Source: Octopus sinensis
Lineage: Eukaryota
Length of the DNA: 64,000 bases
Direction: 5' to 3'
NCBI RefSeq assembly: GCF_006345805.1
Contig: NC_043007.1
Coordinates: 31,372,001-31,436,000 of the forward strand
In this document: positions 33,586-44,700 of the stretch, piece after piece
How positions within the stretch are numbered: the stretch's first letter is position 1
Layout of the letters: each line of letters opens with the position of its first letter
Position numbers and translations under genes: made by a program
Notes under the pieces: model-generated
Seen by the model: the letters and a program-made list of their open reading frames with translations, nothing else
Database searches by the model: none
What the model was told of the DNA's origin: nothing

Positions 33586-33613
33586 ATGAGGCATTTGTTG
33601 GTTATATTTGGCA
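33586..33613 (+). CDS. M4 metalloprotease, coding exon 1 (signal peptide N-part MRHLLVIFG + 1 nt)
   Basis: Textbook Kozak GCCACC-ATG (33580-33588), 9 codons + 1 nt, then donor GTAAGT (33614-33619). The phase-1 join to the acceptor at 42790-42791 gives MRHLLVIFGSLLLIKTSDA-AQR, a convincing signal peptide. Confidence 0.8.
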
Positions 33614-33846
33614 GTAAGTACATTTTCAAGATTTTTTCATCGTTCAAGTTTTCATGCATTTTATCTTTGTATTTTCTTATGATGACAACTGACTCATTTC
33701 CTACATAAAATATTTTATAGAAGCTAGATTTGCCTTAACGACTGTTGTTAGCACCTCTGCTATTCCCTGCCGGACCGATCTTGTAATCCTCCTCACCGGT
33801 TTCTCTTTTGTGATGAGATCTGCCACAATGATGCGGCCTTAGTTAA

Positions 33847-34068
33847 CCCTTTTGTTACCAACCTGGCTGAAACCGGCTCTGGGTCTGTAGTACAAAAGTC
33901 TTGTTTTCATAAGCGTTGAATTAAAAACCTTCCACCAAACCTTAGTCACAATTTATGTTCCTAACACTAGCTGAATGATGACAAAGTTATTTTACTAACT
34001 TCTTTGTTATATTTAAAGTAATTGAAAGAAACAGAGAGCATCTCAACAGAAATACAGTAACGAAAGAG
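33847..34068. mobile_element. piggyBac-type MITE
   Basis: TTAA on both sides (33843-33846, 34069-34072); TIRs CCCTTTTGTTAC / GTAACGAAAGAG. Confidence 0.8.
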
Positions 34069-34129
34069 TTAAACTCCTTCAGCACAAGAACGAGTCTTAA
34101 CCATCGCAGTTTATTCATTGGTTATTCTT

Positions 34130-34330
34130 TTACTCTTTCACTTGTTTCAGTCATTTGACTGCGGCCATGCTGGAGCACCGCCTTTAGCCGAGCAAATCGA
34201 CCCCCAGGACTTAGTCTTTGTAAGCCTAGTACTTATTCTATCGGTCTCTTTTGCCGAACTGCTAAGTTACGGGGACGTAAACACACCAGCATCGGTTATC
34301 AAGCGATGTTGGGGGGGACGAACACAGACA
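34130..34330 (-). mobile_element. SINE-A 3' half
   Basis: Tail match. Confidence 0.8.
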
Positions 34331-34629
34331 CACCTATTATCAAGGAGAGGGTTTCACAAGAGCGATACCCAACAGTTGAAGGACGCTGTTTTGGCAGGCT
34401 TTGCAACAATCACCAAAGCACACCTTCGCAAAGTATCAAACGGGACACGGTCCGACACCATTTTGTGCCCCGAAAATGGTGGTGACCTTCTCCGTGTGTG
34501 ACAAAGTCAATATCAATGGAAGTGTAATATACTTAAACCAGTACACGTGTTTGATATTATTATATTGTTCCTCTATTGTTCTCATTACTTCTCGGCAAGG
34601 GCTGATAAGACTTTCAGACCACCCAATAA

Positions 34630-35255
34630 CATAGTCTGTACAGCTTTCACCAGCCACTCGTCTATCCCCAGCTTCATCAGAGCCCATTTTATCACCCAGT
34701 AGGACACTCTATCGAAGGATTTCTCTATATCAATGAATGCTAAGTATAATGATTTAGTCTTAGCTAAGTACTTCTCTTGCAATTGCCTGACTATAAAAAT
34801 AGCGTCTTTAGTGCTTCTTTCCTGGACGAAGCCAAACTGCATTCTGTCCAGCCGAATTATGTTCCAAATTGATTGGGCTATAAACTCCCTCCGTAATTTT
34901 CATCTCCTGATCCATGAGTTTGATGTCTCTCTAATTGTTTCTATCAAAAGCAGCATCCATAATCTTGTATCAGCTAATAATAATGCTGCTACGCCAGTCA
35001 CTAGCTATTATACCTTCCTGAATGACTTGGTCGACTATGCGGGTGACTAGCCCGTATTTTACCATTCCGGGTATTTTGAGCATCTCAGCTGTGATTCCTG
35101 ATGGACCAGGGGCTTTCCCTGTTTACATGTTTTCAATTGTCTTATCTACCACACTGCTGTCCACTAGGATAGTCGGCCCTTCTGTTGGGTTCACTTTATC
35201 CCATTCTTTATCTACATTCTACAGTTTCGCATAGCGACTTTTCCACGCCTCTTTC
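34630..35255 (-). mobile_element. RTE LINE reverse-transcriptase remnant
   Basis: GKAPGPSGITAEMLK...MQFGFVQERSTKDAIFIVRQLQEKYLAKTKSLYLAFIDIEKSFDRV. Confidence 0.9.
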
Positions 35256-41669: not shown

Positions 41670-41715
41670 GACACCTGATGAAGGCTGGAGGGTATATCAG
41701 CTGAAACGTTGTGTT
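41670..41715 (+). ncRNA. Minimal type I hammerhead ribozyme motif (family HHR-A), best-preserved copy
   Basis: Stem I GACAC/GTGTT, core CTGATGA plus one extra A, stem II GGCTG/CAGCT, GAAA, palindromic AACGTT in place of stem III, GUU cleavage triplet. Confidence 0.75.
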
Positions 41716-42264
41716 AACAACAAACAAGATGAGGACAAATATCCGTCAAATGTAAATAATGTAAATAATGTAAATAATGCAAATAATGCAAATAATGTAA
41801 ATAATGTAAATAATGCAAATAATGTAAATGATGTACATAATTCCTCATCTCTTAAATATAGAACTGTAAAAATAAACAATCACATCATCAAAATTCCACA
41901 GCTCTTAGATGATGTATGATTGATACAAAACAATTGAATTAATAAGCATCATATTTGACAGAATAACCTCAAATGCTAAAAAGTTAAAATTGCCAAACAT
42001 TGACTCTAACCAGGCTGCATTCAAATCAGCCAAATTATCCTACACCAAAAAATGCACAGACCTCAGTTAACTTTTAGATTTCAGATGTTGATTGTTGTTT
42101 AACAAAAAGGATACCCACATCCATTCACTTAACAAACCACTCCCCTATTTCATCAAATATTAAATTAATTACAGAAACATATTGAATTTATATTTGGACA
42201 AATTTGTCCAGAAATTTTTTAGTGAGCAATATATCTTAGATTATGGGCTTATATTCATATTTAA

Positions 42265-42649
42265 ACTAGCAGTATTGCCCGGCATTGCTCGGGTTTGTTT
42301 CGGCCCTTTAGAATTGGAATTTTTGAAGAGTAAAAATTTTGCATTATGTAGCTTGTTATTCTCTTTAAGTGAACATTTTTCTGGTTGAAATACACCGAAA
42401 AATGGCGACACAGCAGTAAAAAAATAGGGATTTTCATAGAAAAAAAAGCACCTTTTTGATGTAAATAATTTTTGCTGTTAACATGGTCCAATTTGAATTT
42501 TTTCTTCAACGGAATGAAGAGCAAGCCTTCTTTTATCATACTCTCAATTTTGGTCAACTCGCACCGCAGGATCTCGGAGGAGATAGTGTTAGTTGAAGGC
42601 TACCAAACCTGCCATACACAGACAACTCCAGCTTTATATATAGAGAGAT
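42265..42649 (+). mobile_element. Helentron/HINE-like element near the 3' end of M4 intron 1
   Basis: Same 5' ACTAGCAGTATTGCCCGGC..GCTCGGGTTTGT as 17483, different body, 3' acagacaact...tttatatatagagagat. Confidence 0.6.
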
Positions 42650-42791
42650 TGTTAATGAATTTAATTCTTTTAAAAATAAATATAGGCCTAAACTGTGTAT
42701 GAATGTTTTGTCAAAAAATTAATCTTGGTCTTGAAGAAAAAAAATTCTGATTTTTCTGTTATTAATAATTGTAATGTTTTCATTTTTTTAG

Positions 42792-43231
42792 GTCTATTGT
42801 TGATAAAGACATCTGATGCAGCTCAACGTGTTGATGCTCATGAAAGAGCGAAGAAGATGGTTTACTCTTCATCTTCATTGCAGCGGCGTCATTTAGACAA
42901 AGCTAAAATAACAGTCAGAGATCTTCTTGGTTTGAAGGAATATGAAGAAGTCGAAGAATCAAACCGTATCAAAACAGCTGAAGGCACCGAAGTTTTACGC
43001 TTACAAGAGAAGTTCTTGGGTGTTCCTGTTTTTGATGCTTCATTAACTGTTACCCAAGATCACGAGGGACATTTGACTGGGGATGCAACGGGAACATTTA
43101 TTCAAGGAATTGAAGATGATATCACAAATGTAGAACCAAAGCTTTCAAAATCAGATGTCTTTGATATTGCCTTGAAAGCAGAGGGAGATGAAGCTTCTGC
43201 AGATAGTATCCACCCAAATACAAAATTATGA
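42792..43231 (+). CDS. M4 metalloprotease exon 2, frame 0: end of signal peptide + FTP propeptide region
   Basis: Polypyrimidine tract and ttttttAG acceptor at 42790-42791. LRLQEKFLGVPVFDASLTV matches the FTP propeptide motif (RxxQxxxGVPV). This frame stops at TGA 43229-43231, and homology continues in the -1 frame from about 43216. Confidence 0.85.
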
Positions 43232-44700
43232 TTTTTCTGGATGAAAATAACAAATCTCGATTAGCGTACCGTATAAGTTATCGAATAGAAAATGAAGAAG
43301 TTATTAAACGGCCTACATTTGTTATTGATGGTAATACTGGAGAAATACTGCTGAAATATAATAACTTAGATACCATTTCTAAAGTACTGACTGGTTCTGG
43401 TGGTAATGAAAAATCAGGAATATACAATTTTAGTGACAAAAATCACAAAGCTTTTATAACTCGGATTGGTGAGATGTGTTTTCTTGAAAATAATTATGTA
43501 AAAGTAATAGACATGCAAAACAGTCGCAGTGCAAATCCTAATGAAACAGATCCTATGTATTATGTTTGTGATGTTGGTTTTAATGACAGTGTCAATACAG
43601 CCATGTCACCAGCACTTGATGCCTTCTATTATGGCAGCATGGTATCTCAGATGTTTCAGGAATGGTTTAATACTTCAGTATTAAACAAGCAAGCAATACT
43701 GCGGGTTCATTATGGGACCTATTTCGAAAATGCATTTTGGGATGGGGAATATTGCACGTTTGGTGATGGTTTTGAAATGTTTTATCCTTTTACAGTTGGA
43801 GATATCGTTGCACATGAACTTGCTCATGGCTTCACAGAACAACACTCCGGATTGATTTATGCAGGCCAGTCTGGAGCCATGAATGAGGCGTTTTCCGATA
43901 TAACGGGAGAAATCACTGAAGCTTATATGGGTAAGAATGACTGGTTTGTTGGCTTTGATGTCATGAAAAATACGGACGCACTGAGATACATGGCAAGCCC
44001 CTCCTTAGACAACGTCTCTGTTAGTCATGTAGATAATTTCACTTCAGATTTGGACGTTCATTTGGGAAGCGGAATTTATAATTATATTTTTTACTACATT
44101 GTACATGAATTAAAAATGGACATTAAAGAAACTTACCAAGTTTTCCTCATTGCCAATACAATATATTGGCACCCTTTTACAGATTTCACTTCTGGGGCTT
44201 GTGATATGTTGAAGGTTGCCTATGACCTTGGCAAAGATCTAACCCCCTTTATTAAAGCCTATGAAGTTACAGGAATTAAACCATGTGATGTAGAGAAACA
44301 TATTCAAAGATTGATATTTCGCAGACCAATATCAGGCATTAGAGTATCAGCTGAAGCCAACCCAGTCTTTGAACTTGGTTATCCAAAGCTAGTTGGGAAT
44401 ATTACAGTTATTGCCACTAGTATGTGTGGCAAAGTTCATATTAAGTTATCAAAGCACAATATGTTAACAGAGGGAGATGGTTTGGAAGCAGATACATTGT
44501 TAGGTGAAGGCACATCAGAAGTGACTTTAGGAAATCTTGAAGAATCTAAAATGTTTATCAAATTGTCTCCAGAATCTAGAGAAAGTTTAGAAAATGTTAC
44601 TCTGCGTGCTACGTATGAGTGTGATCCTTTTTTCATTGCTGAATCCTATGATGATTATACGTTACATGAATTAATGTGTGATGAGGACTATAAGTATTAA
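43216..44700 (+). CDS. M4 (thermolysin/elastase/vibriolysin-like) zinc metalloprotease: PepSY propeptide, catalytic domain, PPC-like C-terminal domain
   Basis: RLAYRISY...RPTFVIDGNTGEIL (PepSY); GSGGNEKSGIY (mature N-terminus); VHYGTYFENAFWDG; HELAH at 43813-43827; GAMNEAFSD with third Zn ligand Glu at 43885-43887; DVH at 44053-44061; two Cys pairs placed as in Pseudomonas elastase. No further intron. Stop TAA at 44698-44700. Confidence 0.95.
   Translation, partial: KYKIMIFLDENNKSRLAYRISYRIENEEVIKRPTFVIDGNTGEILLKYNNLDTISKVLTGSGGNEKSGIYNFSDKNHKAFITRIGEMCFLENNYVKVIDMQNSRSANPNETDPMYYVCDVGFNDSVNTAMSPALDAFYYGSMVSQMFQEWFNTSVLNKQAILRVHYGTYFENAFWDGEYCTFGDGFEMFYPFTVGDIVAHELAHGFTEQHSGLIYAGQSGAMNEAFSDITGEITEAYMGKNDWFVGFDVMKNTDALRYMASPSLDNVSVSHVDNFTSDLDVHLGSGIYNYIFYYIVHELKMDIKETYQVFLIANTIYWHPFTDFTSGACDMLKVAYDLGKDLTPFIKAYEVTGIKPCDVEKHIQRLIFRRPISGIRVSAEANPVFELGYPKLVGNITVIATSMCGKVHIKLSKHNMLTEGDGLEADTLLGEGTSEVTLGNLEESKMFIKLSPESRESLENVTLRATYECDPFFIAESYDDYTLHELMCDEDYKY

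What the first reader, a model, noticed from the sequence alone, without database searches (positions are those of the whole stretch)
33586..44700. Bacterial-type M4 (elastase/vibriolysin-like) protease as a resident gene in a cephalopod-like genome: candidate domesticated horizontal transfer
Seen: a complete preproenzyme of about 645 aa if the frame break is repaired, with signal peptide, FTP and PepSY propeptide, HELAH, NEAFSD, DVH and a PPC-like tail. The propeptide, catalytic and C-terminal domains are all in one exon. Known: M4 is chiefly a bacterial family. The GGNxKxGxY start, both Cys pairs and the PPC-like tail are features of the gammaproteobacterial LasB/vibriolysin subgroup (comparison from memory). 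Seen: the gene is AT-rich like its surroundings, flanked by host SINEs, and has Kozak, GT-AG and AATAAA signals, so it is not contamination. Inference: an old transfer from a marine bacterium, now serving as a secreted digestive, salivary/venom, hatching or antimicrobial enzyme. Similar genes may be shared with other invertebrates, which would make any transfer ancient.
Basis: partly seen in the sequence, partly recalled or inferred. Interest (0 to 1): 0.85.

Follow-up and report, generated by a model that had tools for sequence, protein, structure and literature searches.

The report
Octopus M4 protease of bacterial origin
This is the Octopus sinensis copy of a secreted zinc-protease gene that molluscs took from bacteria long ago; the transfer was published for another octopus in 2018, and this copy has a one-base frame break in the assembly.

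Summary
Window 33586-44700 (+) carries a two-exon gene for a thermolysin-family (M4) preproenzyme. It has a signal peptide, an FTP/PepSY propeptide, HELAH / NEAFSD / DVH, both pseudolysin-type Cys pairs and a divergent PPC tail. One frame break lies at about 43,210-43,230.

The window is Octopus sinensis chromosome CM016869.1. The locus is collinear with O. vulgaris over about 30 kb, where the orthologue is an intact 645-aa gene. It is also collinear with O. bimaculoides, so contamination is excluded.

Two points change the reading.
- The family is mollusc-wide, not cephalopod-specific: chiton, limpet, abalone, apple snail, three bivalves and cephalopods. These sequences form one clade in a neighbour-joining tree (78% bootstrap).
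- It is already published. Liu et al. 2018 reported seven 'ancient HGT' Zn-metalloproteinases in O. bimaculoides, with RT-PCR from hepatopancreas. Their ZnMP5 amplicon is 99% identical to the collinear O. bimaculoides orthologue of this gene.

Piece 2 differs from O. vulgaris at dN/dS about 0.13, and the exon shows a single 1-nt length difference. The break is therefore an assembly indel or a very recent lesion.

Verdict: a real, ordinary member of a known horizontally acquired family. Interest is low.

The parts
33586..33613 (+). Exon 1: start codon in gccaccATG context, first 9 codons plus 1 nt of the signal peptide (MRHLLVIFG), donor GTAAGT at 33614
   Evidence: Intact O. bimaculoides and O. 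sinensis copies have the same exon but 49 nt long. The 21-nt shorter form is shared with the intact O. vulgaris orthologue.
33614..42791 (+). Intron 1 (9,178 nt, GT...AG), rich in repeats
   Evidence: The orthologous intron is about 2.8 kb in O. bimaculoides.
42792..44700 (+). Exon 2 coding part: rest of the signal peptide, propeptide, catalytic domains, tail and stop codon
42959..43078 (+). FTP propeptide motif
   Evidence: PF07504, 22.2 bits, cut-off 21.
43210..43231 (+). Frame break: the reading frame changes here and the upstream frame ends at TGA 43229-43231
   Evidence: This is the only length difference from the O. vulgaris exon in 1,911 nt.
43441..43839 (+). Peptidase_M4 catalytic domain, including HELAH at 43813-43827
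43846..44268 (+). Peptidase_M4_C helical domain, including NEAFSD 43882-43899 and DVH 44053-44061
44278..44697 (+). C-terminal tail: divergent PPC (pre-peptidase C-terminal) beta-sandwich plus a short Cys-containing helical extension
   Evidence: hhalign 97.6%, E 2.8e-12; AlphaFold2 pLDDT 89.
44737..44774 (+). Two AATAAA polyadenylation-type signals (44737, 44769)
   Evidence: Sequence only; no transcript evidence.
44985..45300 (+). Interspersed repeat (SINE-like) just downstream of the gene
   Evidence: Present at the same site in O. vulgaris, absent there in O. bimaculoides.
35621..35929 (-). Second copy of the same repeat, inside intron 1
   Evidence: 90.6% over 310 nt.
34585..34842 (-). 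Reverse-transcriptase fragment (retroelement remnant) inside intron 1
   Evidence: RVT_1, E 2.8e-5, below the gathering score.

Best explanation
The region is the Octopus sinensis orthologue of the O. bimaculoides gene published as ZnMP5. It belongs to a mollusc-wide family of thermolysin-family (M4, pseudolysin/vibriolysin-type) zinc endopeptidases whose nearest relatives are bacterial.

Shown here:
- The gene sits in host DNA.
- It has one spliceosomal intron inside the signal-peptide coding part.
- It encodes the full bacterial layout: signal peptide, FTP/PepSY propeptide, catalytic domains and a PPC-type tail.
- Every catalytic residue is in place.

Inferred mechanism:
- The protein enters the secretory pathway as a zymogen.
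- The propeptide acts as folding aid and inhibitor and is cut off autocatalytically.
- The mature enzyme of about 300 residues binds zinc through the two His of HELAH and the Glu of NEAFSD.
- The Glu of HELAH and the His of DVH carry out catalysis.
- The PPC tail helps substrate binding or is trimmed.
- The most likely role is extracellular protein digestion in the digestive gland.

Origin (inferred): the whole preproenzyme was taken up from a marine bacterium before the living mollusc classes diverged. The top-scoring bacterial homologues are mainly gammaproteobacterial. It was then duplicated repeatedly.

State of this copy: as assembled, it is interrupted by one frame break. That is either a consensus indel in the assembly (somewhat more likely) or a very recent inactivating lesion.
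For: Identity and location:
- The window is O. sinensis CM016869.1, about 31.372-31.436 Mb.
- Pfam M4 and M4_C are well above cut-off and FTP just above it. LasB pro-elastase matches at E 2e-83 with aligned motifs.

Orthology:
- The O. vulgaris locus is collinear over about 30 kb at 93-97% identity. Its gene is an intact 645-aa model, CAI9730734.1.
- The O. bimaculoides locus is collinear upstream, in the intron and downstream.
- The published ZnMP5 hepatopancreas amplicon is 98.96% identical to that locus.

Selection:
- dN/dS against O. bimaculoides is 0.30 (piece 1) and 0.46 (piece 2).
- Against O. vulgaris, piece 2 has 10 synonymous and 5 non-synonymous differences, a ratio of about 0.13.
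- Exon 2 has one indel in 1,911 nt. The flanks have 4-5 indels per 1.9 kb.

Family distribution:
- Named homologues occur in 16 mollusc species of four classes.
- The 50 mollusc-type sequences form one clade at 78% bootstrap, and cephalopods at 84%.

Tail: the tail profile finds bacterial multi-PPC proteins and a Colwelliaceae M4 with three PPC domains. hhalign gives 97.6%.

Gene structures: the catalytic part is never split by an intron in Octopus, Haliotis or Pomacea.
Against: - Nesting of the mollusc clade inside bacteria is not resolved. Deep nodes have 15-46% bootstrap, the method was neighbour joining, and the bacteria sampled were only the top hits. The donor is therefore unknown.
- One divergent O. 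bimaculoides paralogue (P0311) falls outside the clade on a long branch.
- No transcript evidence exists for this copy. Exact look-ups found the 490-aa and 645-aa products only on genome contigs.
- The published RT-PCR amplicon lies within one exon, and only hepatopancreas was tested. Tissue and role are weakly supported.
- Animals outside Mollusca were searched only with limited sensitivity.
- The frame break, if real, removes the signal peptide and most of the propeptide from the only long ORF.
Confidence: 0.78

Rival explanations
1. The O. sinensis copy is a true, young pseudogene or a null allele in the sequenced animal. The frame break is real, and the only long product (490 aa from Met 43228) lacks the signal peptide and most of the propeptide, so no secreted enzyme is made. 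Function is covered by the tandem paralogues at 71.4 Mb.
For: - The break is in the deposited chromosome sequence.
- A protein identical to the truncated 490-aa piece is on record at NCBI/UniRef.
- The family is multi-copy, with two 92%-identical tandem paralogues (dN/dS 0.77) on the same chromosome. Loss of one copy would be tolerated.
- dN/dS against O. bimaculoides is higher for piece 2 (0.46) than between paralogue lineages (about 0.34).
Against: - There is only one lesion in 1,906 coding nt of exon 2, with no other stop or indel.
- dN/dS against O. vulgaris is about 0.13 in piece 2.
- The orthologue is intact in both O. vulgaris and O. bimaculoides.
- The break lies next to short A runs, where long-read consensus errors are common (established knowledge, not tested here).
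Confidence: 0.4
2. M4 peptidases in molluscs descend vertically from an ancient eukaryotic or animal M4 that most other lineages lost. No bacterium-to-animal transfer took place.
For: - The family is old and inherited vertically within Mollusca.
- M4 homologues also exist in the brachiopod Lingula and in a foraminiferan transcriptome.
- The bacterial sister group is unresolved.
Against: - All named animal hits with the tail are molluscs.
- Lingula's copies are closer to bacteria (about 50% identity in the catalytic part) than to molluscs (about 40%). They lack the tail and do not group with molluscs.
- Liu et al. found no qualifying homologues in 7 vertebrates, 50 fungi, 12 plants and 26 protozoa (PMC6011040).
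- The complete bacterial domain layout, including PPC, sits in one exon.
- The family is described as almost exclusively bacterial (abstract of PMC7851659).
Confidence: 0.08
3. The M4 sequence is bacterial contamination or a chimeric misassembly in the octopus assembly.
For: High similarity to Vibrio and other gammaproteobacterial M4s.
Against: - The same gene lies in the same 30-kb repeat-rich context in independent assemblies of O. vulgaris and O. bimaculoides.
- It has a GT-AG intron with a separate signal-peptide exon.
- GC3 is 0.286 and exon GC is below the window mean.
- Identity to the best bacteria is only about 40%.
Confidence: 0.01

Closest known systems
Octopus bimaculoides ZnMP5 (XP_014781458.1; current 653-aa model 'virulence metalloprotease'), one of seven 'ancient HGT' Zn-metalloproteinases of Liu et al. 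2018 (PMC6011040; Gene, doi 10.1016/j.gene.2018.05.013)
   Same: It is the collinear orthologue. Amino-acid identity is 82-83%. It has the same two-exon structure and the same domain layout and tail. The published amplicon matches its locus at 99%.
   Different: The O. bimaculoides gene is intact, its signal-peptide exon is 21 nt longer, and its intron is about 2.8 kb instead of 9.2 kb.
Octopus vulgaris 'elastase-like' CAI9730734.1 (645 aa)
   Same: It differs from window exon 2 by 16 substitutions in 1,911 nt. It has the same short signal peptide and the same locus and repeats.
   Different: Its reading frame is uninterrupted. The window differs by a single 1-nt length change.
Pseudolysin (LasB elastase, Pseudomonas aeruginosa) and vibriolysin-type bacterial M4 peptidases with PPC/PKD tails
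   Same: - Propeptide plus catalytic fold, with the GGNxKxGxY mature start.
- HExxH, NEAFSD and DVH.
- Both disulfide pairs.
- E 2e-83 to pro-elastase 8cr3.
- The best-scoring bacterial homologues are Vibrio M4s with PPC.
   Different: - Identity is only about 40%.
- The gene is eukaryotic, with an intron and host codon usage.
- The PPC tail is so diverged that Pfam PF04151 no longer hits it: GDxDLY has become G-KVHIK.
- The tail carries an extra C-terminal helical stretch with two conserved Cys.
Lingula anatina M4 cluster (LOC106154861 and neighbours, LFEI02000769.1)
   Same: These are animal-resident M4 genes with a short first exon and one large exon, in tandem copies.
   Different: They have no PPC tail and carry a low-complexity insert. 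They are closer to bacteria than to molluscs and fall outside the mollusc clade. This probably reflects a separate acquisition.

Membership tests
Peptidase family M4 (thermolysin family), pseudolysin/vibriolysin subgroup | Peptidase_M4 and Peptidase_M4_C domains above Pfam gathering scores | tested here: met
   85.6 bits (cut-off 22.4) and 100 bits (cut-off 24.4).
Peptidase family M4 (thermolysin family), pseudolysin/vibriolysin subgroup | Zinc ligands and catalytic residues: HExxH, Glu of NEAFSD, His of DVH | tested here: met
   HELAH, NEAFSD and DVH align with the LasB residues.
Peptidase family M4 (thermolysin family), pseudolysin/vibriolysin subgroup | Closer to pseudolysin-type than to thermolysin-type enzymes; two disulfide pairs | tested here: met
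   LasB at E 2e-83 against thermolysin at 1.6e-25. The four Cys (43477-79, 43567-69, 44200-02, 44284-86) align with the LasB Cys.
Peptidase family M4 (thermolysin family), pseudolysin/vibriolysin subgroup | N-terminal FTP and PepSY propeptide | tested here: inconclusive
   FTP is just above cut-off. PepSY is cut by the frame break in the window. It scores 16.9 bits against 24 in the O. vulgaris orthologue and 26.6 bits in the cephalopod-like relative P0011.
Peptidase family M4 (thermolysin family), pseudolysin/vibriolysin subgroup | Uninterrupted reading frame for the preproenzyme | tested here: not met
   one frame break at about 43,210-43,230 in this assembly. Intact copies exist in O. vulgaris and O. 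bimaculoides.
Peptidase family M4 (thermolysin family), pseudolysin/vibriolysin subgroup | Zinc-dependent, phosphoramidon-sensitive endopeptidase activity | not testable with these tools
   Needs recombinant protein.
PPC (bacterial pre-peptidase C-terminal) domain, PF04151 | Sequence homology to PPC | tested here: met
   - There is no direct Pfam hit.
- The tail profile finds proteins whose matched stretches are PF04151 repeats.
- hhalign gives 97.6%, E 2.8e-12 over 101 columns.
- The bacterial set was chosen from the tail profile's own hits, so the test is partly circular. The Pfam labels are independent.
PPC (bacterial pre-peptidase C-terminal) domain, PF04151 | Beta-sandwich fold like solved PPC / collagen-binding domains | tested here: inconclusive
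   The model has pLDDT 89. Foldseek hits include the PPC of a collagenase (5sv5, E 8.8e-4) and ColG/ColH collagen-binding domains. TM-scores are only 0.45-0.58, and unrelated beta-sandwiches score alike.
Bacterium-to-animal horizontally transferred gene, fixed in the host | Physical linkage to host DNA in independent assemblies | tested here: met
   collinear loci in three Octopus species.
Bacterium-to-animal horizontally transferred gene, fixed in the host | Host-type gene features (spliceosomal intron, composition) | tested here: met
Bacterium-to-animal horizontally transferred gene, fixed in the host | Supported phylogenetic nesting within donor-domain sequences | tested here: inconclusive
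   the mollusc clade has 78% bootstrap, but its position among bacteria has only 15-46%.
Bacterium-to-animal horizontally transferred gene, fixed in the host | Absence from the recipient's wider relatives | tested here: inconclusive
   The only named animals found are molluscs plus Lingula. Search sensitivity and output caps limit this. Liu et al. found none in 7 vertebrates.
Bacterium-to-animal horizontally transferred gene, fixed in the host | Expression in the host | not tested
   There is only the published RT-PCR of the O. bimaculoides orthologue from hepatopancreas, and the amplicon lies within one exon. Nothing is available for the window copy.

The most novel reading that the evidence does not exclude
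The same kind of secreted bacterial M4 preproenzyme may have been captured more than once by lophotrochozoans:
- once before the mollusc classes split, with its PPC tail kept for over half a billion years and expanded into several old paralogue groups;
- separately in brachiopods, without the tail.

Each time the gene ended up with a short 5' exon for the start of the signal peptide and one large unsplit exon. That would make it a repeated, convergent route of domestication of a bacterial protease as an animal digestive enzyme.
Probability: 0.3. Interest if true: 0.45.

Novelty: already known. Interest (0 to 1): 0.2.

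Why it matters
Bacterial genes fixed in animals are rare, so a secreted bacterial protease kept across a whole phylum is a good case study. 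The octopus members were reported as ancient transfers in 2018, and the gene models are in public annotation under names such as 'elastase-like' and 'virulence metalloprotease'.

This analysis adds four things:
- orthology of the window gene to the published ZnMP5;
- distribution across four mollusc classes;
- evidence that the tail is a diverged PPC domain;
- a warning that the O. sinensis copy is broken as assembled.

One practical consequence: transcripts labelled 'vibriolysin' in mollusc metatranscriptomes may come from the host rather than from bacteria.

Tried and rejected
- Contamination or misassembly: rejected, because the loci are collinear in three species.
- Cephalopod-specific transfer: rejected, because of the chiton, gastropod and bivalve homologues.
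- Tail as a new animal domain: rejected in favour of a diverged PPC.
- Tail-profile search in the word-indexed protein collection: it returned nothing, not even the query's own sources, so it was uninformative. The exhaustive representative search worked.
- Search with the chiton protein: the candidate cap limited it to 16 hits, but it did reveal Lingula and a foraminiferan.
- Literature searches on M4, thermolysin, vibriolysin, abalone and salivary-gland terms found nothing specific. Only the last search found the prior report. The main Gene paper is not held.
- No tRNA and no Rfam family anywhere in the window.
- No other protein-coding ORF of note in the 64 kb. The long ORFs elsewhere are microsatellite artefacts.
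- The frame was not read through or repaired. The two pieces were searched apart, and the intact O. vulgaris and O. bimaculoides proteins served as full-length references.

Full report
**What is there**

Between 42695 and 44700 the + strand holds two ORFs in different frames, 178 and 490 codons. They are the only substantial non-repetitive ORFs in the 64-kb window.
- Pfam finds the FTP propeptide motif in the first ORF.
- It finds Peptidase_M4 (E 6e-24) and Peptidase_M4_C (E 1.7e-28) in the second.
- The best solved relative is Pseudomonas pro-elastase (LasB, 8cr3, E 2e-83). Thermolysin is far behind at about 1e-25.
- The LasB alignment shows the GGNxKxGxY start of the mature enzyme, HELAH, NEAFSD, DVH and all four Cys of the two pseudolysin disulfides.

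**Gene structure**

tblastn with intact octopus homologues places their residues 14-166 and 159-656 on 42782-43237 and 43213-44697. The frame changes inside about 43,210-43,230.

The first 16-17 residues of the homologues are encoded by a separate short exon.
- The window has the matching exon at 33586-33613 (gccaccATGAGG...GGCA|gtaagt).
- The acceptor tttttttag lies at 42790-91, so exon 2 starts at 42792 and intron 1 is 9,178 nt.
- The window's exon 1 is 21 nt shorter than in O. bimaculoides and in the O. sinensis paralogues, and is in phase.
- AATAAA follows the stop codon at 44737 and 44769.

**Whose genome, and is the gene resident?**

Exact look-up puts the 490-aa piece on Octopus sinensis chromosome CM016869.1 at 31,415,228-31,416,700.

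The O. vulgaris protein CAI9730734.1 ('elastase-like', 645 aa) is in the same 90% cluster. It begins MRHLLVIFGSLLLIKTSDAA, the window's short signal peptide.
- Its locus is collinear with window 24.7-53.9 kb at 93-97% identity, intron repeats included.
- Over exon 2 the two species differ by 16 substitutions and exactly one 1-nt length difference in 1,911 nt. The equally long flanks have 4-5 indels each.

The O. bimaculoides locus of the 653-aa protein P0002 is collinear with the window in four places: upstream plus exon 1, two intron blocks, exon 2 plus UTR, and about 3 kb downstream.

Exon GC is 0.366 (GC3 0.286) against 0.392 for the window. Contamination is excluded.

**State of this copy**

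I did not read through or mend the break. The two pieces were analysed apart.
- Against O. bimaculoides, dN/dS is 0.30 (piece 1) and 0.46 (piece 2). Comparisons between paralogue lineages give about 0.34.
- Against O. vulgaris, piece 2 shows 10 synonymous and 5 non-synonymous differences, a ratio of about 0.13.
- There is no other stop or indel.

The gene has therefore been under purifying selection until very recently. The break is either a consensus indel next to short A runs or a very young lesion, and the assembly alone cannot tell which. A protein identical to the truncated 490-aa piece is on record at NCBI/UniRef. If the break is real, that product lacks the signal peptide and most of the propeptide.

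**The tail**

Residues 351-490 of piece 2 (44278-44697) have no Pfam hit. They are conserved in all mollusc homologues.
- A profile of 18 tails, searched against 1.84 billion representatives, gave 173 hits. These were mollusc M4 tails plus bacterial proteins with 3-8 matched stretches.
- In those bacterial proteins the stretches are PF04151 PPC repeats. One is a Colwelliaceae M4 with three PPC domains.
- Profile-profile comparison of the mollusc tails with bacterial PPC repeats gives 97.6% probability, E 2.8e-12 over 101 columns.
- The AlphaFold2 model (pLDDT 89) is a beta-sandwich followed by a short helical stretch.
- Foldseek returns PPC and collagen-binding domains among other beta-sandwiches at modest TM-scores.

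The whole bacterial architecture is present in one exon.

**Distribution**

Named homologues that cover the tail come from four classes.
- Cephalopods: Octopus bimaculoides, O. sinensis, O. vulgaris and Argonauta hians.
- Chiton: Liolophura sinensis.
- Gastropods: Patella vulgata, five Haliotis species, Gigantopelta aegis and Pomacea canaliculata.
- Bivalves: Solemya velum, Tegillarca granosa and Pinctada imbricata.

O. sinensis has two further copies in tandem at 71.39-71.44 Mb of the same chromosome. An older paralogue group lies on another chromosome.

I built a neighbour-joining tree of 143 sequences (293 catalytic-domain columns, 200 bootstraps).
- The 50 mollusc-type sequences form one clade (78%).
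- Cephalopods form one clade (84%), with a squid-like group sister to Argonauta plus Octopus.
- The window sequence is sister to O. vulgaris (100%), then O. bimaculoides P0002 (64%).
- The position of the mollusc clade among bacteria is unresolved (15-46%).
- One divergent O. bimaculoides paralogue (P0311) sits outside on a long branch.

Gene structures:
- Octopus and Haliotis have a short first exon plus one large exon.
- Pomacea has three introns, all before residue 167.
- A cephalopod-like metagenome contig (P0011) is intronless.

**Other animals**

The brachiopod Lingula anatina has at least three tandem M4 copies, each with a short first exon and one large exon. They lack the tail. They are about 50% identical to bacteria in the catalytic part against about 40% to molluscs, and they do not join the mollusc clade. 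A foraminiferan transcriptome also has an M4.

**Prior knowledge**

Liu et al. 2018 (Data in Brief, PMC6011040; companion paper in Gene, doi 10.1016/j.gene.2018.05.013, not held) report 12 'ancient' bacterial transfers in O. bimaculoides. Seven of them are Zn-metalloproteinases, ZnMP1-7, and each was amplified from hepatopancreas cDNA.
- Their ZnMP5 (XP_014781458.1) amplicon is 98.96% identical to the P0002 locus and 83.6% to the window.
- ZnMP6 (XP_014782361.1) is P0240.

So the window gene is the O. sinensis orthologue of a published HGT candidate. Their amplicon lies within one exon and only one tissue was tested, which makes the expression evidence modest.

**Mechanism**

This is inferred from the M4 family. 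The product is a secreted zymogen. The FTP/PepSY propeptide acts as folding aid and inhibitor and is removed autocatalytically. Zinc is held by the two His of HELAH and the Glu of NEAFSD. Catalysis uses the Glu of HELAH and the His of DVH. The PPC tail helps substrate binding or is trimmed. The digestive gland is the best-supported site of use. Salivary, venom, hatching or antimicrobial roles have no evidence.

**Verdict**

The gene is mollusc-wide rather than a cephalopod novelty, and it is already described. The copy in this window is broken as assembled. Interest is low.

Noticed in passing
L011 (Lingula anatina LFEI02000769.1) 1459-3632, 8001-10115, 13149-15573: A brachiopod has a tandem cluster of at least three M4 genes, each with a short first exon and one large exon. 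They have no PPC tail and are closer to bacterial M4s than to the mollusc family. This is possibly an independent acquisition.
   Followed up: partly
PMC10913743 (Kellet's whelk perivitelline fluid metatranscriptome): Differentially expressed transcripts named 'virulence metalloprotease (vibriolysin)' and 'neutral protease (vibriolysin)' were assigned to bacteria. Because molluscs carry their own M4 family, these may be host transcripts.
   Followed up: no
window 33586-33613; L001/L002/L004 10001-10051: The signal-peptide exon of this paralogue is 21 nt (7 codons) shorter than in O. bimaculoides and in the O. sinensis paralogues. The deletion is in frame and is shared with the intact O. vulgaris gene.
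   Followed up: yes
window 39696-40271 and 40243-40820: A block of about 550 bp inside intron 1 is present twice in tandem in O. sinensis but once in O. vulgaris: both copies align to L010 15884-16459. ORFs 40100-40381 and 40647-40991 share the same poly-Asn/Asp tail for this reason.
   Followed up: partly
window 44985-45300; L002 15025-15204: The SINE-like repeat just downstream of the gene is present in O. sinensis and O. vulgaris but absent at that site in O. bimaculoides. Intron 1 is 9.2 kb here against about 2.8 kb in O. bimaculoides.
   Followed up: partly
window 6956-7055: An assembly gap (run of 100 N) lies inside a long stretch of microsatellite sequence. Most long ORFs elsewhere in the window are microsatellite artefacts.
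   Followed up: no
P0311 (O. bimaculoides 'elastase', 712 aa): A very divergent octopus paralogue group keeps a canonical PPC motif (GEADLFV) in its tail and falls outside the main mollusc clade on a long branch. The published amplicon for XP_014783435.1 encodes part of this protein's tail.
   Followed up: partly
L005 6001-7938 (ENA ERZ21867824 ctg114567l): A cephalopod-like contig (GC 0.32) encodes a complete 645-aa family member, signal peptide included, in one uninterrupted ORF. The signal-peptide intron is therefore not universal in cephalopods.
   Followed up: no
PMC6011040, methods and Table 3: The paper says the animals were bought at a market in Shenzhen. The ZnMP5 amplicon is nevertheless 99% identical to the O. 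bimaculoides assembly and only 84% to O. sinensis.
   Followed up: no
L001 339-383: A second exon-1-like sequence (10 of 15 residues identical) lies about 9.7 kb upstream of exon 1 of the O. sinensis paralogue P0003. It may be an alternative or orphan first exon.
   Followed up: no
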